A stretch of 31,915 nucleotides of DNA from Octopus sinensis (Eukaryota), in contig NW_021832747.1 of assembly GCF_006345805.1 (NCBI RefSeq), forward strand, positions 1 through 31,915. The letters run 5' to 3'. Each line of letters begins with the position of its first letter. Position 1 is the stretch's first letter. Below, one piece after another: positions 1-30,518 of the stretch. The notes beneath the pieces are model-generated. The model worked only from the letters and a program-made list of their open reading frames with translations, had not been told where the DNA came from and ran no database searches. A program made the translations under genes and the position numbers.

Positions 1-23
1 GGGAACATGAGGAAACAATGTTG

Positions 24-199
24 GCGTAGGAGTGGCTGTGTGGTAAGTAGATTGTTTACTAACCACATTGTTCCGGGTTCAGTTCCACTGCATGGCACCT
101 TGAGCAAGTGTCTTCTACTATGGCCTCGGGGCGACCAAAGCCTTGTGAGTGGATTTGGTAGACGGAAACTAAAATAAGCCTGTCATATATTTGTATATG

Positions 200-242
<43 letters not shown>

Positions 243-315
243 TTGTGTGTCTGTGTTTGTCACCCCAACATCGTTTGACAACCGATGCTGGTGTGTTTAC
301 GTTCCCGTAACTTAG
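24..315 (+). mobile_element. tRNA-derived SINE, family A, 3'-truncated at a junction with an RTE remnant
   Basis: A-box-like TGGCTGTGTGG, B-box-like GGTTCAGTTCC, CORE-like CACCTTGAGCAAGTG, internal (TA)/(TG) tract; homologous to copies at 7901, 14417, 16095 and 19145. Confidence 0.85.
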
Positions 316-1318
316 AAGAGGGAAGGGTGCCAAAACAGATTTTTAATGCGGAGTTGACCAGAAGGAGAAAACCGCAGGATAAACCAAGGAAAGAATTTAA
401 GGGTGTTACAAAAGGCTATCTTAAAGCTTTGGCGATAGGTGTGGCTAAATGGAAGGCATTGGCTGAAAACCGTGAATCACGAAGAAAGATTGTCAAGAAC
501 TGGTATGAAGTCTACGAGCAAGAAAAAATGTCACCCACTTCTTTGAAAGGATAATCCTTAAACAAGATTCAAGTAGAGTGCCTGCAGAAATCTACCTGGA
601 ATTGAAGTGCAATGTGTGTAGACGATTAACTCTTTCAAGGAAATGGATCAGTCAACCACTTAAGTTTACATGATAGTGGTGGAAGCACTTCGTCGGTTAC
701 GACGACGAGGGTTCCGGTTGATCCGAATCAACGGAACAGCCTGCTCGTGAAATTAACGTGTAAGTGGCTGAGCACTCCACAGACACGTGCACCCTTAACG
801 TAGTTCTCGCGGATATTCAGTGTGACACAGAGAGTGACAAGGCCGGCCCTTTGAAATACAGGTACAACAGAAACAGGAAGTAAGAGTGAGAGAAAGTTGT
901 GGTGAAAGAGTACAGCAGGGATCACCACGATCCCCTGCCGGAGCCTCGTGGAGCTATAGGTGTTTTCGCTCAATAAACACTCACAACGCCCGGTCTGGGA
1001 ATCGAAACCGCGATCCTATGACCGCGAGTCCGCTGCCCTAACCACTGGGCCATTGCGCCTCCACTTACATGATAGTACAGCCACCACGTCCGTCGGAACA
1101 CATTTGTAACAGGTTTAGCTTAATTTGCAAGTCAGCTGGTAGTCTGGCCAGGCATGAGGCCAAAACTGAGCCGGTTATGCCAGAGACAGAGGATCAAGTG
1201 TTACATATGTGAACATACTAGTAGAACAGAAGTTAGGTTGAAGAGCCTGCATACAGTTGTGCATAGTTCAAATGAAAGAATGGCACTCTTCTGACAAGGA
1301 GGAGCAATCAACACACAC
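316..1318 (+). mobile_element. RTE-clade LINE 3' remnant (post-RT C-terminus plus degenerate C2H2 fingers), interrupted by a SINE
   Basis: ORF 285-554 reads RVPKQIFNAELTRRRKPQDKPRKEFK...WKALAENRESRRKIV, matching the RTE C-terminal pattern RLPKQILYGEL..G.R..G.P.KR.KD...WE.LA.DR..WR; followed by CX2C/HX3H motifs at 608-671, 1105-1155 and 1199-1264. Confidence 0.8.
678..1064 (-). mobile_element. Full-length tRNA-derived SINE, family C2, with 12-bp TSD
   Basis: Minus-strand head GTGGAGGCGCAATGGCCCAGTGG...GGTTTCGATTCCC (A and B boxes); perfect TSD TTACATGATAGT at 666-677 and 1065-1076. Confidence 0.92.
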
Positions 1319-2016: not shown

Positions 2017-2375
2017 TATATATATATATATAGATATATATATATATATATAATATACATACATACATACATACATACATACATACACACACATACATGT
2101 ATGCATACATAAACACAGACACACGTATACATTAACACAAACACATACATGCGTGTGTGTGCATGCGTGTGTGTGTGTAGAAAGACACTGTGTGTGTGAC
2201 ACTCTTCCAAAGATCGGGTTTAGCTGTGGGTTTCACACGTCATTCCTGTATCCAGTGTTGTGCGACGTGGGTCATCAGCTTCGGTATAGGCCAGAGTGCG
2301 GAATGAGAGCCAAATAATAGAAATTATATACTTTCACAGAAAACAGGTATGGTATTCAATGCCTTGTTTTTACAA

Positions 2376-2603
2376 GGCGGCGAGCTGGCAGAAACGTTAG
2401 CAGGCTGGGCGAAATGCTTAGCAGTATTTCGTCTGCCGCTACGTTCTGAGTTCAAATTCCGCCGAGGTCGACTTTGCCATTCATCCTTTCGGGGTCGATT
2501 AAATAAGTACCAGTTACGCACTGGGGTCGATATAATCGACTTAATCCGTTTTTCTGTCCTTTGTTCTCTCTGTGTTCAGCCCCTTGTGGGTAGTAAAGAA
2601 ATA
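2376..2603 (+). mobile_element. SINE family B (tail type B1)
   Basis: GGCGGCGAGCTGGCAGAAACG head, B-box GAGTTCAAATTCC, core GAGGTCGACTTTGCC.TTCATCCTTTCGGGGTCGAT; flanking 15-bp direct repeat GGTATTCAATGCCTT at 2351-2365 and 2604-2618 (left copy sits 10 nt from the head). Confidence 0.9.
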
Positions 2604-3229
2604 GGTATTCAATGCCTTTATTGAAAAATGCAGTGGACAAAAGAAAAAAAAAGACAATACAGGAGTGATATGTTTTAACATTTATGGAATTCGATCAGCG
2701 CTTAAAGAGAACAGGGAAAAGTTTCAGGTTATGAACCTTATGTGTACAGTAGTAATAAAGACAGGTGATTCAAATGAACGTACGTGGCGGTAATGCGCAC
2801 TGTTTCGTTGCATGGAATACCTTTGCACCAGCACAAATTTTTACAGAGAAATAGTAGAGTTGGTATAAGTTCAAATGATGATAAGTGGTTTGCAAGCATA
2901 GAAATTGTCTAAAACAAGATGCCAACAGACGAATAAAGGTTTGCATGCGTACATATGCTAAAATTATACTTCATGCATACACATGCATACGCACACATAT
3001 GTATGTGTGTAGATGTGTGTGTGTGTGTGTGCGTTTTTGTGTTTGTGTGTGTGTGTGTTTGTGTGTGTGTGTTCATGTGTGTATTCATACCAATGTGGGT
3101 ATAAAGTTGAATTATATGTCTACCAATATGTAGGTGAGATATATTCAGCTTCAGCATATACGCTAATGTGTGTGTTCGCGCGTGTATACATATGTGTGTG
3201 TGTGTGCATGTGTGGTGTGTATATATATA

Positions 3230-4306: not shown

Positions 4307-4629
4307 AAGACTCCGCCGGTTACGACGATGAGGGTCCCAGCTGATACGATCAACGGAACAGCTTGCTCGTGAAATTAACGTGCAAATGGCTGAGCATTCC
4401 ACAGACACGTGTACCTTAACGTAGTTCTCGGGATAATCAGCGTCGTGACAAGAGAGTGACAAGGCTGACCCTTTGAAATACAAGTACAACTCATTTTTGC
4501 CAGCTGAGTGGACTGGAGCAACGTGAAATAAAGTGTCTTGCTCAAGGACACAACGCGTCGCCGGGAATCGAACTCACAACCTTACGATCATGAGCCGAAT
4601 GCCCTAACCACTAAGCCACGCGCCCTCAC
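4307..4629 (-). mobile_element. Full-length tRNA-derived SINE, family C1, with 12-bp TSD
   Basis: Minus-strand A box TGGCTTAGTGG, B box GTTCGATTCC, CORE-like GTGTCCTTGAGCAAGACAC; perfect TSD CACATATACTTA at 4295-4306 and 4630-4641. Confidence 0.92.
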
Positions 4630-5949: not shown

Positions 5950-6440
5950 ATCCTCGACTCCTATACACACAAATATACACACACGCAATTATTTATACGT
6001 ATGCATGTATATGTGTGTGTATGCCTACGCATTATACACGTATTATATATACGTAAATATATATATTTAAATATATGTATATGTGTATGTATTAACAGTA
6101 CATATATGTGTATTGATATATCCATAATTATACATATGTATTTTAATCTACAAATACAGATATATGTACACACCCCTTTATATACATTCATAAATGCACA
6201 CGGACACACATACACAAGTATATTTATGTGTGTACATATATGTATATATATATATATATATATAGATATATATTATATGTGTTGGGTGTGTGTGTGTACC
6301 TAATGTATATATGCGTGTGTATATATATATTTATTTATATATATATACGTATATATGTATGTATATATGCATATATATAATATAACTATATATATTATAT
6401 ATAATGTATGTACGTATATTATATTCATATATATACATAC

Positions 6441-7900: not shown

Positions 7901-8272
7901 GCGCAGGAGTGGCTGTGTGGTAAGTAGCTTGCTTACCAACCACATGGTTCCGGGTTCAGTCCCACTGCGTGGCACCTTGGACAAGTGTCTTCTACTATAT
8001 CCTCGGGCCGACTAAATATTTGTGAGTGGATTTGGTAGACGGAAACTGAAAGAAGCCCGTCGTATATATGTATATATATATATATATACATATATTTATG
8101 TGTGTTCGTGTGTCTGTGTTTGTCCACCCAACATCGCTTGACAACCGATGCTGGTGTGTTTATGTACCTGTATCTTAGCGGTTCGGCAAAAGTGCCCGAT
8201 AGAATAAGTACTAAAAGCGGTGCTCCAGCATGGCCACAGTTAAATGACTGAAACAAGTAAAAGATTAAAAGA
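7901..8272 (+). mobile_element. Near full-length SINE family A with an internal tail deletion
   Basis: Complete head GCGCAGGAGTGGCTGTGTGGTAAG through tail ATGACTGAAACAAGTAAAAG; lacks the ~40-nt segment between AAGTACT and AAAGCGG present in other copies. Confidence 0.9.
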
Positions 8273-8683: not shown

Positions 8684-8865
8684 AATATATATATATATAT
8701 ATTTAATATATATTAAATTCATATAATATATATATATAGATATATAAACACATGTATGCTTATCTACCTTTCTCTCTATCTATTTATCTCTTTACACGTA
8801 CGCACGCACACATTGTATTTTTAAAATTTTGATATATATTTAAAATAATATAAAGTATGTAATCT

Positions 8866-8932
8866 TATGTATTGGCTTAAGTCCTTTCTTGTATGATTTG
8901 CCTATTAGTGGGTTTTAGCTCTAATTTAATAT
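8866..8932 (+). repeat. Diverged copy of the arm of the 30205-30518 inverted-repeat element
   Basis: TATGTATTGGCTTA...TGATTTGCCTA.TAGTGG.TTTTA.CTCTAATTTAATAT matches 30452-30517. Confidence 0.75.
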
Positions 8933-9502
8933 CATATATATATATAATATAGTACATATATATTCAAAATAAGCAACAAGGATATTCCAAGGATATCCTG
9001 TTTTACTTATTTGATTATAATCACCCCATTTCGATTTTATTCGGATAATACCATACCAAATTCTGGTGCCATTAACTTAAGTACCATATTCAACTGAATC
9101 TAAATTTTTACTGAACTTATATATATATATATATATATATCTTATTATATATATGGGCTGTAAGTTTACACGTATACACACATATACGAAATCCAGAATA
9201 ATTAGAGTATGAATCCCCTTCATGACCACTTAGTCAGAGAAAGAATCGTTGCAGCCACACCCTTTTTTTTTTTCAAGGTTTCTGTACAGCTGGGATGAAG
9301 AGGGGAAGTTGTCTTAGAAATGGAAACACGACTTCAATGTTTTCATAGTGAAATCCACAAAAGTTACCCAAGGACTGAGTGAGGGTTTTAAATCAAGCGT
9401 CATTGCGCCGCCCAAAAACGCCGTGATAGGAATTGAACACAAAACAAACAAGGAAATAACAGCAAATACTGCAAAGCATCCCGTCTAAAATTTTTATCAG
9501 CT

Positions 9503-9919
9503 CTTATTTCTTTATTGCCCACAAGGGGCTAGACACAGAGGGGACAAACAAGGATTGACACAAGGATTAATTGGATTATATCGACCCCAGCGCACAACTG
9601 GTACTTAATTTATCGAGCACGAAAGGATGAAAGGCAAAGTCGACCTCGCCGGAATTTGAACTCAGAACGTAACGGCAGACGAAATACCTATTTCTTTACT
9701 ACGCACAAGGGGCTAAACACAGAGAGGACAAACAATGACAGACAAACGGGTTAAGTCGATTACGTCGACTCCAGTGCATAACTAGTATTTATTTAATCGA
9801 CCCCGAAAGGATGAAAGGCAAAGTCAACCTCGGCGGAATTTGAACTCAGAACGTAACGGCAGACGAAATACGGCTACGCATTTCGCCCGGCGTGCTAACA
9901 TTTCCGCCAACTCGCCGCC
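9503..9919 (-). mobile_element. Tandem dimer of SINE family B with one flanking TSD
   Basis: Full unit 9688-9919 fused to a 5'-truncated unit 9503-9687; diverged 19-bp TSD TAAAA(T/C)TTTTAT(C/T)AGCTCT at 9486-9504 and 9921-9939. Confidence 0.88.
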
Positions 9920-10889
9920 TTAAAACTTTTATTAGCTCTACCAATCCATTGCTTTGAACTGGTAATTTATTCGATCAAATCCGAACAGATGATATGCAAA
10001 AATGCCTTAGGCAAGATTTGAAGAGTGCACAGCGAAGAGCAACAAATCCTATTGGGTGTTTTGTTCTACTCTCTAACGATTCTACCAATGCGCCACCTAG
10101 ACCATAAGGCTCTTCCAACACTGTTGATAAAGGATCAAATATTATTGCTGCCTTTATTGCATATAATAAATCTTTATTAAGCCGGGATGCTTTTCGCAAC
10201 ACCAGTGAATGCATTTTACTGTTCTTCCTACATACCAGAAGATATATAAGATATTTAGTTTTGGTAAGCAGTCGGCAGTGAGTACACATCACGGACAAGA
10301 CTCAATGTAGCCGAAATGGATCTAGCTTTTTCACTTTCCGCTGCGTCTCTCTTTCTCTCTCTCTCCGATATGTATTGTATTTTTTAAACACAGCACGTCT
10401 AAAAGAGATGTTATCTCTGAACGAATACAGCAATAAATTTGTCTTTCAACGATCTATTTACATCAAATATAATACATAGATGACTGTTATTACAAAGATA
10501 TATTTTGATAAGCAAAAGGCTTTATATTTTTAAAGAAGGGGAAAATGATTTTGTAGCGGGCATCCATATCCTAAATACTTAACATTAATGTGAAATGGCC
10601 TTATTTGGGACAGAAATGGTTCCTCGGCTATGTCCTACTGACATCTACGCCACTCAGTAGAATGACTGATAATGTTGAAAAGAAGGAGCTTCTAACAAGT
10701 CACTCGATCTGCTGGATAAAGCAGTCAAAACTCCTTTGAAATATACATTATTTTATGCAAGAAGGAACATATTGAATATTGGAGTTCATGATATACAGAA
10801 AAAACAAATAATGATAGTCACCATTGGAACAGATTTTACCTACAACAAGTCTGTCCGATCAAGATTACCCTGGGCCAATATAATAGAAT

Positions 10890-11144
10890 CTGGCAGAAAC
10901 GTTAGCACGCCGGGCGAAATGCGTAGCCGTATTTCGTCTACCGTTACGTTCTGAGTTCAAATTCCGCCGAGGTCGACTTTGCCTTTCATCCTTTCGGGGT
11001 CGATAAATTAAGTACCAGTTACGCAATGGGGTAGATATAATCGACTTAATCCGTTTGTCTGTCCTTGTTTGTCCCCTCTATGTTTACACCCCTGTGGGCA
11101 ATAAAAAAATTAAGTACCATTTGTGTACTGGGGTCGATCTAATC
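10890..11144 (+). mobile_element. SINE family B (tail B1) followed by a partial core duplicate
   Basis: Same head and core as 2376; after the A-rich tail the core segment TAAGTACCA...CTGGGGTCGATCTAATC recurs at 11111-11144. Confidence 0.88.
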
Positions 11145-11183: not shown

Positions 11184-11374
11184 TTCTACTATAGACACAA
11201 AGCCTGGAATTTTTTGAGAGAGGGATAGTAGATTACCTCGACCACATAGTTCAATTGGTACTTATTTTATCGATCCTGAAGGATGAAAGGCAAAGTCGAC
11301 CTCGGCGGAATTTGAACTCAGAACGTAAAGACGGACGAAATATCGTGCTAACGATTCTGTCAGCTCACTGCCTT
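11184..11374 (-). mobile_element. SINE family B (tail type B2)
   Basis: Reverse complement of the B head and core; tail TTCTACTATAGACACAA.GCCTG.AATTT matches the 28209 copy rather than B1. Confidence 0.8.
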
Positions 11375-12954: not shown

Positions 12955-15900
12955 TTCTCTTATTTGAAATCTTCCTGTCAGGAAGGGCTTGTCTTCTAAC
13001 AGAAGTATCAAGCCCCGTCGTTGTAATGTAATGTTGATAACAAAACTAAATTTTTATATTAAACTTGAGGAAAGTCTTCCATATTTTTACTGTTTCACTA
13101 AAAAGATTGTGCTTGTAACGTGTGAAGTAGCTGGTTGATTTCTTTTCCTGAAAACCCTAATTAATTCAAAATATCACTTAGATATTTACCCACAAAACCA
13201 AGTGCACCAATTATCATTGGTATTCATCTGATAAAGACAAGAGTTTTCGAAGCAGTTGTCCGTAGTTATCCTCTTTCACTTCGAAAACCAGCTGATGGAC
13301 ATGGTAGTACATGCTATTTCTTGTCTGTCGCAGACAATCATATCCAGTCTAACATGTTTACACTTGACAGAAGTTCTGATGAGAATGTTCTGTCCATATT
13401 CCTTGTGTTGATGTTGGCTCATGTGTTGAATAATTCTCTATATTTATTTATGGACAGTTTCTTCTTCGAATGGTATTGTATATCGATTTTGCGGCGACAT
13501 CGTGTTGCATAGAGAGATCTTCCATATTTTGTTGACATTTTTGGGCAGCTGCTAATCACATATATGGGGTCCTACACAGAAATATGACGTAACCAATATT
13601 TTCAGTCTCAGCTTGGGACACCAAGGCTTTCACTGTCTTGTTTAATTTAATATTTCGTAGAAATCTCCTGTTCTTGGAATGTAAATGCATAGCTTTCGAC
13701 ATATGATGAAAACCGTCTCGAGTCCAAGAGAGTGCTCTTCATGCCGATATCACTGTCTTTTTCAAGTCTTCGAGAAACTACCCACACATAGACTTTTCTG
13801 AGCGTTTAACATTCATCTCTTTTTGAGGTATGTTAGTCCGGTTGTTTGGGGTTGTAGAGAGCGCTTCTCGAGAATCTCACTGCCGATACGTAGGATGTTG
13901 TTCTCTTCACCATTCTGAACCATGTTTGTGTATTTATTTTTTTGTTGTCATTGTGTTTTCAGATGTTGTATGAGAGAGGTTGTCGGCACTGGTCTCAAGT
14001 CCCTACATCCTTCATCGTTTCTTAAGTAGGGCCTGTCGACCTTACTGTTTCCAGGAATTTCCAGTTGATGTCAGGATATTGCATGTTTTAATGTCTATAG
14101 AGTGGATTGCCTCTACAGACCAGTCAAATATCCCAAATGTTGGAACCAGCTCTGGTACAGAAAAGGTTTTGTGGAATATTACTTAGTTCTGTTATAAGCC
14201 TGGTATAATATCCTCGGAGCATTCTATCTTTATTCACTGCGCCTTTAGGTATTAGCAGCGTTCTTTGTGAGGAACAGGTGAGATAATGCACAGTTTTGGA
14301 GGTCTGGGTGGGTGCCGATTTTCTAAATTCAACAATTAAATACGTGCACTTCTTTTGACCAAATTCCATTCCTAAATCAGCTGCAAATGTTATTACTAAC
14401 TCCAGCTGCTTTAGTATTACTCTTTTACTTGTTTCAATCATTTGACTGTGGCCATGCTGGAGCACCACATTTATTCGAGCAAATCGACCCCATGACTTAT
14501 TCTTTGTAAGCCTAGTACTTATTCTATTGGTCTATTTTGCCGAACCGCTAAGTAACGGGAGCGTAAACACACCCGCATCAGTTGTCAAGCGAGGACACAT
14601 ACACACAAACACACACACATATATATACATACATATACATATATACGACGGGCTTCTTTCAGTTTCCGTCTACCAAATCCATTCATAAGGCTTTGGTCGG
14701 CCCGAGGCTATAGTAGAAGACACTTGCCCAAGGTGCCACGCAGTGGGACTGAACCCAGAACCATGTGGTTGGTAAGCAAGCTACTTACCACACATCCACT
14801 CCAGCGCCTAACATTATTAACAATTTTAGGATAAATCTTCAGGTCATTTTAAAAGAAACATTATGGACTACATTGATATCTCTAGCGTTGTAGTCCCTAG
14901 CTTGTTGCTATTTAAATTCTATAGCAGCAAAGCCAAAATGAACAGAATTGCAGAAAGACTGTCTCCTTGGAATATTTCCTTTCAAACATTTATAACACTG
15001 GAGACGATCGTATCGTTCTCAGTTGTAAGGGGTGAGACTTGTTGACCCGATCTTTGTGAGCCTCTTAATATCAGCAACTGAGGTAGCAGTTACTTTTTCC
15101 AGATGTAGACATTTCAGCAGCCATGAATGTGGAATAGATTTGAATGCTTTGCTATAATAAAAACCTTACTACATGGATTCTACGGTGTTTTCCTACTTGA
15201 GACACTAAAGCTTTGTTTATCAAAAGTTATTTGGCACAACCTCAAACTCCTTTCCACCTACCTGCACATCACAATGTTGTTGGACTCACAATGATCCTGA
15301 AGGAATTGGTTGAAGCAGCCCGTGTACAGCTTGTGCATAATGGTTAGGTAAGTAATGGAATTATAGCTTTCTGTCAACGCAGTTGTCATTCTTAGCTACA
15401 AAATTTGTATGTTCCATAGCAAGCCAATTTGGTATGTCAATCTGACCTTCCATAGTCATTTTGAATATACATTTTATTGTATTTCTGTAAAATGTCGGCC
15501 GCTCGTACCAATATTCAACTATTAGGTCTTTTCCAGGTGCCTTCTCATTATGTAGTTTGCCTACAGTTATAGTGAAAGTTTTCATGTCAATTGCGTATGT
15601 TTTACTGTCGATATTGGCACAGCCTTCTCTCCTAACTGCATTTGGCCACGATGCATTAAAGTTGAAAACTCTGTTTTCATTCCAGATTTTATACCAGAAT
15701 GATTTATGATCTTCTTGAGTGTGGTGGGATGCTTTCTTAGCAGTAAAGGTTTCTTTCCTCATCTCTCTGTATTAACCCCGTGGCTTGGAAGTAAACTTGT
15801 TATTTATACAGGCTGGTTACTACTCTGTCTCTTCTTGGGATTTTATATTTAACTAATACTACAATTCCCAAAGGAGGGACTTACTTTGGTTAACCTATTT

Positions 15901-16094
15901 AAGCCCTCATTATTCAGCGTTTCCCTTGCAATGACTTTGCTCTTCAGGTAGGGGTAAGAGTGTACATATTTCAAATAACGATTCTTCACTTTTATTTGAT
16001 TCCCTGAAAGAATGTGCATAGGATGAGCTTCAATCCATTTCTTTGCCTTGCTTGGTAAATTAACCGTCTTCTTTAGATTTATGGTAAGACCTAG
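12955..16094 (-). mobile_element. Decayed RLE-type non-LTR retrotransposon (Dong/R4-like): RT, zinc-knuckle remnant, restriction-like endonuclease
   Basis: Minus-strand peptides with stops and frameshifts: FWYKIWNE...KAPGKDLIVEYWY...IPNWL (15361-15762), YSKAFKSIPHSWL (~15115-15155), IFQGDSLSAILFILAL (~14930-14975), broken F.xDDLKIY (~14830-14860), DLGMEFGQKKC (~14345-14378), VISSCPKM and HDVAAK (~13480-13565), KCKHVRLDMIVCD (PD motif as LD, ~13325-13365), IPMIIGALG (~13198-13224), terminal KIWKTFLKF. Confidence 0.9.
14417..14808 (-). mobile_element. Full-length SINE family A nested in the RT of the Dong/R4-like element
   Basis: Complete head-to-tail A copy splitting the RT between DLKIYPKIVNNV and LKQLELV; no convincing TSD seen. 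Confidence 0.92.
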
Positions 16095-16500
16095 GGCTCA
16101 TGTGGCTGTGTGATAAGAAGCTTGCTTCCCAACCACATGGTTACATGGTTCCGGGTTCAGTCCCGGGCGCAGTGGCGCCTTGGGCAAGTGTCGTCTGCTA
16201 TAGCCTTGGGCCGACAAAAGTCTTGTGAGTGGATTTGTTAGACGGAAACTGAAAGAAGCCCGTCGTATATATGCATACGTATGTATTTGTGTATTTGTGT
16301 CTGTTTGTCCCCCAACCACTACTATCGCTTGACAACCAATGTTGGTGTGTTTACATCCCCCTTAATATAGCGGTTCAGCAGAAGACACCGATAGAATAAG
16401 CACCAGGATTACAAAGAGTAAGTCCAGTGGTCGATTTCTTCGACTAAAAGGCGGTGCTCCAGCATGGCTACAGTCAATTGACTAAAACAAGTAAAAGAAT
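16095..16500 (+). mobile_element. Full-length SINE family A
   Basis: Head with an 8-bp internal duplication ACATGGTT, core, internal tract and tail ending GTAAAAGAAT. Confidence 0.9.
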
Positions 16501-16564
16501 ATACACACACACGCACGCATGCACACACACACAAACACACACAAACATACACATACACAGATTT

Positions 16565-19144: not shown

Positions 19145-19325
19145 AATATGGCTGCCTGGTTAGAGGTTTACTTTCCAACCACGTGATCTTAGTTTCTGTT
19201 GACTGTGTGGCGCTTTGGACAAGTGTCTTTTACTGTAGCTCCGGGACGACTAAAGATTTGTGAGTGGCTTTGGTAGACGGAAACTGAACGAATACGTCGT
19301 TTATATATATGTGTGTGTGTTTTTG

Positions 19326-19369
<44 letters not shown>

Positions 19370-19678
19370 CACCCATATATATCTTATATATATATATATA
19401 ATTCTAATATAATATATATCTATATATATATAATAATATAATATATATATATATATACATATATGTGTGTGTGTGTGTGTTTGTTCCCTACCACCGTTTG
19501 ACAACCAGTGTTTTGTGTTTACGTGCTTCTAATGTATCGTTTTAGCAAAAGACACCGTGAGCATATGTACCAGGTTAAAAAAATAAAATGAGTTGTGTGG
19601 TCGATTCGTGCGACTAAAATTCTTCAGGGCGGTGCCCCAGCATGACCGCATCCTAATGACTGAAACTAGTAAAAAAGT
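19145..19678 (+). mobile_element. Older diverged full-length SINE family A with an expanded internal microsatellite
   Basis: Diverged head and core, ~180-bp TA/TG tract (19301-19480), tail GGCGGTGCCCCAGCATGACCGC...ATGACTGAAAC. Confidence 0.82.
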
Positions 19679-22179: not shown

Positions 22180-22739
22180 CAGTGGTTCTCAACCATTCTT
22201 TATCTATTTGTTTGTTTGTTCCTTCTCGAGTCATATCCTGGATCATTAGGGCCGGTTTCCCGGTTTCCTTGGCGTATAGGTTCCCCAACTGCACGGGACG
22301 CCAGTCCGTCGCAGGTGAGCTGCAAGATGCAGGAGGAAAGAGTGAGAGAAAGTTGTGGCGAAAGTGTCAGCAGAAGTTCGCCATTAACTTCTACCGGAGC
22401 CGAGTGGAGCTTCGGTGTTTCGCTCATAAACACGCACATCGCACGGTCTGAGATTCGATCCCGCTATCCCTCGACCATGAGTCCGCTGCTCTAACCACTA
22501 GGCCATGTGCCTCCACATCTATGGACCCCTTTGATTACTATTCTATTGTGGTCGAGTCTCATCGCCATTCGATGTTTAAAAACTTATTTTAAAGACACTT
22601 CTTTGGCGTAGATTGAACTATGTAATACGTTAGAGAAAGAAACCTAGCGTCTTTTGCCCTAAATACATCCAAAGTAACATGGGCCCCGAAAATACTACTA
22701 ATATACAAAAATGCAACTAAACTACTTTGAGAACAGCTG
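22180..22739. mobile_element. hAT (Charlie-like) MITE interrupted by a SINE
   Basis: TIRs CAGTGGTTCTCAA and TTGAGAACAGCTG (11/13 match); 8-bp flanks GCTTAGAT and TTATAGAT fit an NNNTAGAN target; about 245 bp once the SINE is removed. Confidence 0.7.
22208..22516 (-). mobile_element. tRNA-derived SINE, family C3 (C2-type head and body, different tail), 6-bp TSD
   Basis: Head GTGGAGGCACATGGCCTAGTGG; body GAGTGAGAGAAAGTTGTGG shared with 678-1064; (AAAC)n tail; TSD ATCTAT at 22202-22207 and 22517-22522. Confidence 0.88.
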
Positions 22740-23295: not shown

Positions 23296-23849
23296 GTCAG
23301 GTCACTTTTGAGTGCTACTGGTAGCATGTAACCCAGTACAACCTGTTGCATGGTCGGGTCGTCGGCGACTAAACCGGCACCCCACCAAGCTTGCTTGGTG
23401 AGGAGGGTGTTTATTGGACACCCTGCAGGATGAAAAGCAAAACCCGTCAAAGGGCGGAGGAACTCTTGAGAGTCAACGGCCATCCAATAAATGTCTTAGG
23501 GCTGTATCATGCGCGGGGACATAGAAATAACCGGACTGAATACACGATCGCGCGATTAAACCATTGGGAGTGAAGGACTCCTAGCCTTTGTTAGTGCATC
23601 CTTCTAGGAGAAGGTAACTCGGGTAACTGGGATAACTCCGACATAAAACCTGCGGCTCAGTGGTTACCGATGATGTTGACTTGTTCTTCTTTTCGGATTA
23701 TGGCTGCTGTTTCTTAGTGAGTGAGATTGACTCAGTGCACAGCCTTTCCTCACTTTAGAAAAAAAATCTTCTTGCACAGGCATTGCACGATAACAACATT
23801 GATTAAGCTTCGTGCAATGGACATACTCGATAACGAGGGGGCAGCCACC
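23296..23849 (+). mobile_element. Probable non-autonomous RTE derivative (5' UTR fused to a 3' tail)
   Basis: GC-rich hairpin-rich island inside (TA)n; CTAGGAGAAGGTAACTC...AAAACC resembles RTE 5' UTRs; end ACTCGATAACGAGGGGGCAGCC resembles RTE 3' ends; no RT coding sequence between them. Confidence 0.55.
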
Positions 23850-27303: not shown

Positions 27304-27645
27304 CATATATATATATATATATATTTATATTATATAGAGGGCACTGTTACACATAGATGCTGCACGCTAGGAGGGACTTTTAAAGTCAAAACTACCAAAA
27401 TAAACAAATTGTACCGAATGCAATCTTCGAAGCGAGTCATCTAAAAACAGAATTTAGTTACATATCACCTGTGATTTCGCAATCATAGATATGTATATAT
27501 GTATGTATGTATGTAAGTATTATGTATGTATATACACAAGCAAGCACATAAATGCAAAGCAAGGTACTCGAATACCGAAGGTAGAGTTATATGCCTTTTT
27601 TGTTTTATCAAAGCTGCAAAAGCATGACAAAAGACAAAGATGTCA

Positions 27646-27713
27646 TTCCCTTTCGTCGGACAATTGTGATCAGTTTGTTGCAGTCTTGATCACAACCGTC
27701 CGACGAGCGGGAA
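27646..27713. ncRNA. Pre-miRNA-like hairpin
   Basis: 68-nt foldback with about 25 bp of stem (5+10+10), one 1x1 and one 2x2 mismatch, 12-nt loop containing UGU; lies in sequence not seen elsewhere in the window. Confidence 0.5.
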
Positions 27714-28059
27714 CGTGAGACTCTGAGTAACGGTATTTTGTGGTGTTTTTGCAGCTTTAATAAAAAATTTTAAAAAACATGTCTATGTGAGTGTGTCTGT
27801 TTGTCTGTCTGTCTTTCTCCACACACACTCACACACACACATTCTACTATCGGTAAGAAATTTGAGACTGAAACGAAATATGCATACTAACAATGACACA
27901 ACACATATATATATGCATACATCCATCCATACATACATACACACATACTTACTCACATACACACAGGCTTACATTTATATATACATACATTCATATTCAT
28001 ACGCAAACATACCTATGTACATTTAAACATACATACAATCATAGATACATATGTACATA

Positions 28060-28161: not shown

Positions 28162-28208
28162 GACTCACCCCTAGATTGGAGTAGGGATATAATATCTTAT
28201 AGAGGAAA

Positions 28209-28427
28209 GGCGGCGAGCCGGCAGAAACGTTAGCACGCCGGGCGAAATGTTTAGCGGTATTTCATCTGTCTTTGTGTTCTGAGTTCAAATTCCGCCGAGG
28301 TCGACTTTGCCTTTCATCCTTCTGGCTCGATAAATTAAGTACCAGTTGCGTACTGGAGTCGATCTAATCAACTGGACCCACACCCAACCCCAAAGAAATT
28401 TCGGGGCTTGTGCCTAGAGTAGAAAAG
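28209..28427 (+). mobile_element. Full-length SINE family B (tail B2) with TSD
   Basis: B head and core; tail ...TTTCGGGGCTTGTGCCTAGAGTAGAAAAG; diverged 17-bp TSD AATATCTTAT(A/G)GAG(G/A)AA at 28191-28207 and 28428-28444. Confidence 0.9.
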
Positions 28428-29045: not shown

Positions 29046-29098
<53 letters not shown>

Positions 29099-29103
29099 GT
29101 ATG

Positions 29104-29137
<34 letters not shown>

Positions 29138-30208: not shown

Positions 30209-30518
30209 ATAAAATTAGGGAGTAAATCCAAACTTACAGGGAAAAATTAGATTTAGGATTAAATCTAATTTTATAATATAAATAATATTATATTAAATTA
30301 GAGATAAAACCACTATTAGGCAAATCAAACAGTGAGTTTAATTTATTAATTTAAGTAATTCAAAAAAATTTTAACTTTAATTTAAATAATTTAATTGGAT
30401 TTTTATATTTTATATTTTATATTTTTTATATTTTTTAATTAATTTTATTTCTATGTATTGGCTTATGATTTTCACTGTTTGATTTGCCTAATAGTGGTTT
30501 TATCTCTAATTTAATATA
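30205..30518. repeat. AT-rich element with a perfect 47-bp inverted repeat and a 13-bp hairpin
   Basis: Arms 30289-30335 and 30472-30518 are exact reverse complements; hairpin at 30243-30272 with GGAT loop. Confidence 0.85.

What the first reader, a model, noticed from the sequence alone, without database searches (positions are those of the whole stretch)
27601..27767. Pre-miRNA-like hairpin nested within a larger foldback; arms resemble miR-2/13 with a miR-67/307-type seed
The inner hairpin 27646-27713 has about 25 bp; on the minus strand the 2x2 mismatch becomes two G-U pairs. An outer stem pairs 27603-27625 with 27743-27765 (23 bp, one mismatch, two G-U). The plus-strand 3' arm GAUCACAACCGUCCGACGAGC resembles miR-2/13 (UAUCACAGCC...GA(C/U)GAGC) but with CACAACC, the miR-67/307 seed if processing starts at 27690; a 22-nt duplex 27650-27671 / 27690-27711 would have 2-nt overhangs. 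These miRNA comparisons are from memory. Coleoids are known for a large expansion of novel miRNAs, so this could be a seed-shifted paralogue or a new family. The alternative is a foldback MITE (no TSD seen).
Basis: partly seen in the sequence, partly recalled or inferred. Interest (0 to 1): 0.7.

Follow-up and report, generated by a model that had tools for sequence, protein, structure and literature searches.

The report
Palindromic hairpin carrying a miR-67 seed
A real 165-base inverted repeat in octopus-like non-coding DNA would fold into a microRNA-shaped hairpin whose 3' arm starts with the miR-67 seed, but nothing available here shows that it is expressed, conserved or related to miR-67 by descent.

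Summary
Region 27601-27767 folds into one long interrupted hairpin on both strands (-74 kcal/mol, z about -9.4 and -10.5). It consists of two nested inverted repeats, each 85% complementary. The modelled duplex 27650-27671 / 27690-27711 has 19 pairs, 2-nt overhangs and an 18-nt loop. Its 3p arm begins UCACAACC, which published data confirm as the first eight bases of octopus Mir-67 and of Lottia/Biomphalaria miR-67.

The identity is not established. Rfam mir-67 scores 14.6 bits against a threshold of 53. Beyond the seed, the arm resembles mollusc miR-67 no better than chance and resembles miR-2a only suggestively. None of the six canonical processing motifs sits at its expected position.

The two arms align over their whole length, with substitutions, indels and wobble-producing changes split evenly between strands. 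Their divergence matches that of neighbouring SINE copies. This looks like a young DNA palindrome decaying neutrally, not an ancient microRNA gene. There is no second copy and no target-site duplication in the window.

No cephalopod genome or small-RNA data could be reached, so expression, conservation and copy number remain untested. My best reading is a young inverted-duplication hairpin, at most a proto-miRNA. A genuine Mir-67 or Mir-2 paralogue remains possible.

The parts
27603..27635 (+). Outer stem, 5' arm (TTTTATCAAAGCTGCAAAAGCATGACAAAAGAC)
   Evidence: Pairs with 27733-27765. The arms are 33 nt and 85% complementary. Pair table.
27636..27649 (+). Lower stem of the modelled pri-miRNA, 5' side. 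11 pairs plus one mismatch lie below the modelled Drosha cut. 27636-37 are unpaired.
   Evidence: Pair table. The arm alignment shows indels concentrated here.
27650..27671 (+). Modelled 5p arm (star): CUUUCGUCGGACAAUUGUGAUC
   Evidence: No octopus miRNA seed in the held parts of the PMC9699675 supplement matches any register of this arm.
27672..27689 (+). Terminal loop, 18 nt, containing a 3-bp mini-helix
27690..27711 (+). Modelled 3p arm (guide): UCACAACCGUCCGACGAGCGGG. The seed CACAACC occupies 27691-27697. The 5' U is paired with A27669.
   Evidence: Sequence. The 8-mer is identical to lgi/bgl-miR-67, to the Rfam mir-67 consensus, and to the start inferred for Ovu-Mir-67.
27712..27732 (+). 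Lower stem, 3' side, with bulges at 27713-14 and 27721 and an 8-nt unpaired stretch at 27725-27732
27733..27765 (+). Outer stem, 3' arm (GTATTTTGTGGTGTTTTTGCAGCTTTAATAAAA)

Best explanation
The region is a young, imperfect DNA palindrome about 165 bp long, with arms at roughly 27603-27673 and 27686-27765. It arose from a single inverted duplication, either by replication template switching or by insertion of a palindromic non-autonomous element. Since then it has drifted at about the neutral rate.

It lies in SINE- and microsatellite-rich, octopus-like non-coding DNA. Any transcript crossing it on either strand would fold into an interrupted hairpin of about 70 bp.

Shown: the hairpin, its dimensions, and the seed.

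Inferred: such an RNA would be a substrate for double-strand-specific enzymes. Drosha and Dicer could release a duplex of about 22 nt from the apical 62 nt. The + strand 3p product would carry the MIR-67 seed, and ADAR could edit the stem.

I read it as at most a proto-miRNA, a hairpin of the kind from which new miRNAs are born. I do not read it as the ancient Mir-67 gene. On this reading the seed identity is most likely a coincidence of one arm of a palindrome.
For: - The arms align over their whole length, including the poorly paired middle: 65 matches, 6 transitions, 6 transversions and 13 gap columns.
- The inner and outer inverted repeats are equally complementary, at 85% each. The modelled miRNA duplex is therefore no better preserved than the flanks.
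- Of the 6 transitions, 3 give wobble pairs on the + strand and 3 on the - strand. No RNA strand is favoured, and the two strands fold equally well.
- Arm divergence of about 16% matches the pairwise divergence of SINE copies in the same window (75-90% identity). This fits neutral decay since a recent origin. A palindrome extending about 45 bp below the modelled Drosha site would not survive hundreds of millions of years unselected.
- CpG observed/expected is 1.5 in the inner hairpin, close to the value in SINE-rich 200-nt windows (1.39) and above the window average (0.84).
- No family-level match: Rfam mir-67 scores 14.6 bits against 53, mir-2 is absent, and nothing reaches a gathering score.
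- Tail similarity to lgi/bgl-miR-67 has p 0.55.
- Local alignment to verified mollusc miRNAs is not above window noise.
- The basal UG, CmR, bulged GWG and CNNC motifs are absent from their canonical positions. The only UGU lies 5 nt beyond the 5p end. The duplex mismatches fall at positions 7-8 rather than 10-12 (motif definitions from PMC11701709).
- TE-borne hairpins and a perfect-TIR MITE occur in the same window. Inverted-repeat hairpins are therefore ordinary in this genome.
Against: - The apical hairpin fits curated miRNA dimensions well. Arms and loop are 22/18/22 nt, giving a 62-nt precursor. The duplex has 19 pairs, against a MirGeneDB mean of 19 +/- 1.6. The guide has a paired 5' U, and about 11-12 bp of stem lie below the cut before a large internal loop.
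- The exact 8-mer UCACAACC sits on the arm that is mature in Ovu-Mir-67, the 3p arm. I estimate about a 3% chance of an 8-mer match to some conserved octopus family in some plausible register. This is my own rough calculation: about 28 register/arm positions times about 60 8-mers, divided by 65,536.
- The tail GACGAGCG resembles miR-2a's GAUGAGCG (rank 3-6 of 63,782 positions).
- The element is single-copy in the window and has no TSD.
- With only 12 mismatches, the neutrality argument has little statistical power.
Confidence: 0.5

Rival explanations
1. It is a genuine member of the MIR-67 (or MIR-2) family: either the annotated octopus Mir-67 gene itself or a paralogue of it. It would be transcribed on the + strand and cut by Drosha at 27649/27650 and 27711/27712 and by Dicer at 27671/27672 and 27689/27690. 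The 3p strand UCACAACCGUCCGACGAGCGGG would then be loaded to repress mRNAs bearing GGUUGUGA sites.
For: - The exact 8-mer (a 9-mer, AUCACAACC, against the Rfam consensus) sits at the start of the 3p arm, which is the mature arm of Ovu-Mir-67.
- Ovu-Mir-67 is the only octopus miRNA in the held parts of the supplement with this seed.
- Ovu-Mir-2-o20-v1 starts UCACAGCC in the same register, one transition away.
- mir-67 is among the Rfam families recovered on the right strand and coordinates.
- The tail is similar to bgl-miR-2a, and its differences are mostly U-to-C transitions matched by A-to-G changes in the other arm.
- Hairpin dimensions are canonical.
- It is a stand-alone locus, as mir-67/307 is in flies and worms (from memory).
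Against: - 14.6 bits against a gathering score of 53.
- The tail is unlike the gastropod miR-67 that is identical between Lottia and Biomphalaria (p 0.55).
- The whole-arm palindrome extends far beyond a pri-miRNA stem and shows neutral-looking decay.
- No processing motif is in place.
- No miR-71 or miR-2 neighbours are present.
- The mature sequence would hold four CpGs (five in the arm overall), which I consider unusual for an ancient miRNA (my judgement).
Confidence: 0.18
2. It is a lineage-restricted miRNA, new or not yet annotated, born from the palindrome. It would be processed as in the model above, and its MIR-67-type seed would have arisen by convergence.
For: - Canonical pre-miRNA geometry inside a long young hairpin, which is the expected look of a recently born miRNA.
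- Coleoids gained 90 novel families, and the authors state that their count is an underestimate (PMC9699675).
- The 5' U on the 3p arm and 5' C on the 5p arm favour loading of the 3p strand.
Against: - No seed from either arm or either strand, other than the Mir-67 8-mer, appears among the octopus miRNA 8-mers in the held parts of Data S3.
- No processing motifs are in place.
- Base rate is low: most genomic inverted-repeat hairpins yield no miRNA (general knowledge).
- Expression is untested.
Confidence: 0.17
3. It is one copy of a dispersed palindromic MITE or foldback family, inserted by a transposase acting in trans, with no RNA function of its own.
For: - A whole-length palindrome of MITE size, about 165 bp.
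- Another MITE-like element with perfect 47-nt terminal repeats, plus a partial second copy of it, lies in the same window.
- CpG content is like that of young repeats.
Against: - No TSD at any plausible boundary.
- No second copy or fragment in 32 kb, whereas the window's real repeat families recur 2-6 times.
- The termini are AT-rich and ill-defined.
- No matching ORF or DNA was found in the collections that could be searched. Those collections hold almost no cephalopod DNA, so this is a weak negative.
Confidence: 0.15

Closest known systems
MIR-67 family (miR-67 / miR-307; Rfam RF00844; Ovu-Mir-67 in MirGeneDB)
   Same: The first eight bases of the 3p arm are identical (UCACAACC), and A precedes them as in the Rfam consensus. 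The 3p arm is the mature arm. The locus stands alone. The hairpin folds on both strands. From memory, Drosophila mir-307 is also processed from both strands.
   Different: The covariance-model score is far below threshold (14.6 against 53 bits). The 3' two-thirds of the arm is unlike gastropod miR-67. The hairpin continues into a 33-bp outer stem that conserved miRNA genes do not normally have.
MIR-2 family (miR-2/13; bgl-miR-2a-1-3p UAUCACAGCCAGCUUUGAUGAGCG)
   Same: It shares AUCACA.CC and the tail GA(C/U)GAGCG. Most differences are transitions. Octopus Mir-2-o20-v1 starts in the same register (UCACAGCC).
   Different: Position 8 of the miR-2 register is A, not G, so the 7-mer seed differs. 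There is a 2-nt shorter spacer. No mir-71 or mir-2 cluster is present in the window. The Rfam mir-2 model gives no hit even at E<=10.
miRNA precursors derived from palindromic MITEs or inverted duplications (for example human mir-548 from MADE1, and young plant MIRNA genes; from memory)
   Same: The whole precursor is a DNA-level palindrome whose arms can be aligned end to end. The stem is longer than a canonical pri-miRNA stem.
   Different: Those cases have many genomic copies and sequenced small RNAs. Here neither copy number nor expression is known.
Hairpin-RNA (hpRNA) endo-siRNA loci and ADAR-edited inverted repeats in introns and UTRs
   Same: A long interrupted intramolecular duplex of about 70 bp in non-coding DNA. 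Coleoid transcripts are rich in edited hairpins (PMC9699675).
   Different: Known hpRNA stems are usually hundreds of bp long. No transcript, siRNA or editing data exist for this locus.

Membership tests
Animal miRNA gene (MirGeneDB criteria) | Hairpin with arms of 20-27 nt, a loop of at least 8 nt, about 19 +/- 1.6 pairs in the duplex, and a precursor under 80 nt in molluscs | tested here: met
   The model gives 22/18/22 nt, a 62-nt precursor and 19 pairs. Criteria come from PMC11701709. This shows structural potential only.
Animal miRNA gene (MirGeneDB criteria) | Reads from both arms with 2-nt offsets and homogeneous 5' ends | not testable with these tools
   No small-RNA data could be reached. 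The relevant data are GSE192550 / PRJNA791920.
Animal miRNA gene (MirGeneDB criteria) | Conservation in at least two species | not testable with these tools
   No cephalopod genome collection was available. The protein-based routes and two metagenome scans found nothing usable.
Animal miRNA gene (MirGeneDB criteria) | Processing motifs (basal UG, CmR/mGHG, bulged GWG, mid-BMW, apical UGUG, CNNC). These are supportive, not obligatory. | tested here: not met
   On the + strand, positions -14/-13 are AA, -5 is A and +5 is U. There is no CNNC within +1..+30. The UGU lies 5 nt past the 5p end. The mismatches fall at positions 7-8 rather than 10-12. On the - strand, CNNC is found only at +6.
MIR-67 | Seed CACAACC at nt 2-8 of the 3p mature arm | tested here: met
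   The seed occupies 27691-27697, and the full 8-mer is identical to lgi/bgl-miR-67 and to the start inferred for Ovu-Mir-67.
MIR-67 | Match to the family covariance model (Rfam RF00844, gathering score 53 bits) | tested here: not met
   14.6 bits; E 0.41 on an 89-nt search and E 2.6 on a 551-nt search.
MIR-67 | Similarity of the remainder of the mature sequence to family members | tested here: inconclusive
   Tail shuffling test: p 0.55 against lgi/bgl, 0.047 against the Rfam consensus, 0.063 against cel-miR-67. Global rank is about 200 and 8-20 of 63,784 positions respectively.
MIR-67 | Identity or orthology with the curated Ovu-/Obi-Mir-67 precursor | not testable with these tools
   The precursor sequences are not in any held text.
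MIR-2 | Seed AUCACAG at nt 2-8 | tested here: not met
   The candidate reads AUCACAA in that register.
MIR-2 | Clustered with mir-71 and other mir-2 hairpins | tested here: not met
   No other hairpin bearing ATCACAG, TCACAGCC or TGAAAGAC is present in the 32-kb window. Clustering is typical of the family rather than obligatory (from memory).
MIR-2 | Match to the Rfam mir-2 model | tested here: not met
   It is not listed even at E<=10 on the 89-nt and 551-nt searches.
MITE / foldback transposable element | Terminal inverted repeats | tested here: met
   The outer arms are 33 nt and 85% complementary, and the arms can be aligned throughout.
MITE / foldback transposable element | Target-site duplication | tested here: not met
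   No direct repeat flanks any plausible boundary between 27596-27603 and 27765-27775.
MITE / foldback transposable element | Multiple dispersed copies | tested here: inconclusive
   No other copy exists in the window. Genome-wide copy number could not be measured.

The most novel reading that the evidence does not exclude
The palindrome is a recently born, expressed miRNA gene of octopods whose guide strand carries the ancient MIR-67 seed, either by convergence or by capture of a Mir-2/67-like arm. If so, it would be a caught-in-the-act example of how coleoids generated their unusually large set of new miRNAs: inverted duplication or a palindromic element feeding an existing target network.
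Probability: 0.15. Interest if true: 0.6.

Novelty: new member of a known kind. Interest (0 to 1): 0.3.

Why it matters
The source of the coleoid miRNA expansion is explicitly stated to be unknown (PMC9699675). A young palindrome that already has pre-miRNA geometry and an existing conserved seed would be a concrete candidate for how such genes arise. It would also add a second input to the Mir-67 target network. If instead it is silent, it is an ordinary decaying inverted repeat. In that case it is a useful caution that seed-plus-hairpin matches occur by chance in repeat-rich genomes.

Tried and rejected
1. Rfam. A gathering-threshold search of the whole window gave 0 hits. E-value searches of the locus and of the window returned only weak generic-hairpin hits (plant MIR537, MIR9471, mir-7) and microsatellite artefacts (mir-297/466/3149). 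I rejected these as identifications.

2. Orthologues through the protein collections.
- The ORF across the hairpin is not on record and has no homologue.
- An RT-like ORF has no homologue.
- A SINE ORF gave one 543-nt metagenome contig.
- Ten long window ORFs are not in the collection.
- Pfam found nothing on ten ORFs.
I found no recognisable exon, so I could not fetch any neighbouring-gene locus.

3. Two metagenome DNA scans, one for the 3p arm and one for a degenerate two-arm pattern, gave 0 matches. This is uninformative, because these collections hold essentially no cephalopod DNA.

4. Literature. Octopus Mir-67 and Mir-2 precursor sequences are not in any held main text or supplement. Only 8-mers and arm usage could be recovered.

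5. Mir-2/71 cluster hypothesis. No partners are present in the window.

6. tRNA-derived or terminator-type explanations. ARAGORN found 0 genes and the terminator scan found 0 sites.

7. Strand choice from wobble bias. The split is 3 against 3, so it is uninformative.

Full report
**1. What is there**

Region 27601-27767 folds as a single RNA strand into one long interrupted hairpin. The energy is -74.4 kcal/mol on the + strand (z -9.4) and -74.3 on the - strand (z -10.5). None of 200 dinucleotide shuffles reached this on either strand.

The repeat finder resolves it into two nested inverted repeats, each 85% complementary:
- inner arms 27646-27672 / 27687-27713;
- outer arms 27603-27635 / 27733-27765.

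- 25 pairs in the inner hairpin;
- an AA/CC 2x2 mismatch at 27662-63 / 27696-97, which becomes two G-U pairs on the minus strand;
- an outer stem with one mismatch and two G-U pairs;
- a duplex 27650-27671 / 27690-27711 with 2-nt overhangs.

The inner 70 nt alone have z -7.3 on + and -7.9 on -.

**2. Context**

The window is 35% G+C. It is full of TA/CA/TATG/TAGA microsatellites and holds several SINE-like families present in 2-6 copies each. There are no tRNA genes, no Rfam family at gathering score, and no Pfam domain in ten long ORFs.

A LINE-tail-like ORF (279-551) has 92 relatives in the 1.84-billion-protein representative library. The best is an Octopus bimaculoides protein at 49% identity.

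The foldback is unique in the window. It sits on a complex-sequence island between a TATG repeat and a GT/CA repeat. A scan of the whole window for local inverted repeats with complex arms found only this one and a MITE-like element at 30289-30518.

**3. Fit to a miRNA precursor**

Take the cuts as 27649/50, 27671/72, 27689/90 and 27711/12. The arms and loop are then 22/18/22 nt, giving a 62-nt precursor. Other features of this model:
- 19 pairs in the duplex;
- a guide with a 5' U that is base-paired;
- 11 pairs plus one mismatch below the cut, followed by a 2+8-nt internal loop that could act as the basal junction.

These values sit on the MirGeneDB 3.0 averages: arms 22 +/- 1 nt, loop median 15-16 nt, 19 +/- 1.6 pairs, and mollusc precursors under 80 nt (PMC11701709).

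None of the six ancestral bilaterian processing motifs is at its canonical position (definitions):
- basal UG: absent;
- C at -5 and purine at +5: absent;
- CNNC: none within +1..+30;
- apical UGU: offset by 5 nt;
- duplex mismatches: at guide positions 7-8 instead of 10-12.

Each motif is only moderately frequent, so this is weak evidence against.

**4. The seed**

The 3p arm starts UCACAACC.
- lgi/bgl-miR-67 is UCACAACCUGCUUGAAUGAGGAC (PMC7328434).
- The Rfam mir-67 consensus reads cAUCACAACCUCC....
- In Zolotarov et al. 2022, the conserved target 8-mer of Ovu-Mir-67 is GGTTGTGA, so the mature form begins UCACAACC.
- In the same paper the 3p arm is the mature one, and a single Mir-67 gene is named (PMC9699675 Data S3 and Table S4).
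- Ovu-Mir-2-o20-v1 has the target 8-mer GGCTGTGA, so it starts UCACAGCC in the same register, one transition away.

No 8-mer corresponding to any register of the 5p arm, or of the minus-strand arms, occurs in the held parts of that supplement.

**5. Is it related to MIR-67 or MIR-2 beyond the seed?**

- Rfam mir-67 aligns to 27641-27718 on the + strand but scores only 14.6 bits against a gathering score of 53. mir-2 does not appear even at E<=10.
- Shuffling the 15 nt after the seed gives p 0.55 against lgi/bgl-miR-67, 0.047 against the Rfam consensus, 0.063 against cel-miR-67, and 0.02 and 0.005 against the miR-2a and miR-13b tails.
- Local alignment of verified mollusc miRNAs against the window does not place the candidate above noise.
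- In a global 24-mer comparison it ranks 3-6 of 63,782 positions against bgl-miR-2a-1-3p, 8-20 against the mir-67 consensus, and about 200 against lgi/bgl-miR-67.

After allowing for the number of families, arms and registers implicitly tried, none of this is compelling.

The exact 8-mer is the one strong item. My rough estimate of the chance that some conserved octopus 8-mer lands in some plausible register of one of the four arms is about 3%. No miR-71 or further miR-2 hairpin lies in the window.

**6. Origin**

Aligning the left arm to the reverse complement of the right arm shows homology along the whole length, including the badly paired middle:
- 65 matches;
- 6 transitions;
- 6 transversions;
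- 13 gap columns, concentrated at 27633-27646 / 27713-27742.

The whole 165 bp is therefore one DNA-level inverted duplication. It is not a hairpin that happens to lie inside another.

Three observations point to neutral decay:
- The inner repeat (the miRNA duplex) and the outer repeat are equally complementary, at 85% each.
- The six transitions give three wobble pairs on each strand, so no strand's RNA structure is favoured.
- Arm divergence of about 16% equals that between SINE copies in the same window (75-90% identity).

CpG observed/expected is 1.5 in the inner hairpin, as in the SINE-rich 200-nt windows (1.39), against 0.84 for the window as a whole.

This is what a palindrome of modest age decaying neutrally looks like. 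It is not what one expects of a gene that has existed since the protostome ancestor, where pairing 45 bp below the Drosha site has no reason to persist. The sample is small (12 substitutions), so the argument is indicative only.

**7. MITE?**

The size and the palindromic build fit. The window also holds a true MITE-like element with perfect 47-nt terminal repeats (30289-30335 / 30472-30518) and a partial second copy of it (8812-8951).

The candidate, however, has no TSD and no second copy in 32 kb. Genome-wide copy number could not be measured.

**8. What could not be done**

No cephalopod genome or small-RNA resource is reachable with these tools. Three protein searches, one representative-library search, exact look-ups and two metagenome scans yielded no orthologous DNA. 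Octopus Mir-67 precursor sequences are not in any held text. Expression, conservation, copy number and identity with the curated Mir-67 are therefore untested.

**9. Verdict**

| Reading | Confidence |
|---|---|
| Young inverted-duplication hairpin that any spanning transcript would present to Drosha, Dicer or ADAR; a proto-miRNA at most, with a probably coincidental MIR-67 seed | about 0.5 |
| True MIR-67 or MIR-2 family gene or paralogue | about 0.18 |
| New lineage-specific miRNA with a convergent seed | about 0.17 |
| Copy of a dispersed palindromic MITE | about 0.15 |

These readings partly overlap on the question of origin.

One BLAST against MirGeneDB and one mapping of the public small-RNA libraries (GSE192550 / PRJNA791920) would settle the matter.

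Noticed in passing
window 30289-30518 (partial second copy at 8812-8951): MITE-like element with perfect 47-nt terminal inverted repeats (30289-30335 / 30472-30518) around a 136-nt AT-rich spacer. Its right end recurs at 8812-8951 with 74-87% identity. No clear TSD was seen.
   Followed up: partly
window 2374-2609, 9505-9687, 9689-9921, 10890-11144, 11227-11345, 28207-28379: SINE-like family with copies 83-90% identical, in both orientations. Each copy carries its own 25-bp hairpin (for example 2389-2448: -31.6 kcal/mol, z -4.9). An ORF read through one copy has a single 86%-identical relative, on a 543-nt ENA metagenome contig, probably host DNA in that sample.
   Followed up: partly
window 14-315, 1432-1824, 7901-8272, 14417-14818, 16102-16501, 19149-19346: Second SINE-like family, 75-88% identical, in both orientations, often abutting microsatellites.
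   Followed up: no
window 687-868 ~ 4310-4490; 874-1064 ~ 22330-22516: A third dispersed repeat, relatively GC-rich (about 50-57% G+C), 80-87% identical between copies.
   Followed up: no
window 279-551 (+): A 91-aa open frame resembling the C-terminal tail of a retrotransposon protein. It has 92 relatives in the representative library. The best is Octopus bimaculoides A0A0L8I2D3 at 49% identity. This is the only direct pointer to the organism.
   Followed up: partly
window 23330-23440: A unique GC-rich stretch (52-59% G+C) that folds into a three-hairpin, cloverleaf-like structure (-43.5 kcal/mol, but z only -2.5). ARAGORN finds no tRNA and Rfam gives no hit. Unexplained.
   Followed up: partly
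whole window, for example 19305-19375, 29047-29126, 5989-6061: Over a hundred sub-threshold Rfam hits to mir-297, mir-466, mir-3149, mir-1277 and mir-5014. All fall on TA/CA/TATG microsatellites. They are artefacts of repeat-derived miRNA models, not genes.
   Followed up: yes
window 14124-16097 (-): Open frames that looked to me like non-collinear reverse-transcriptase fragments (15364-15771, 15852-16097, 14127-14531). They have no Pfam hit and no word-sharing homologue, so they are either very degenerate or not what they appear to be.
   Followed up: partly
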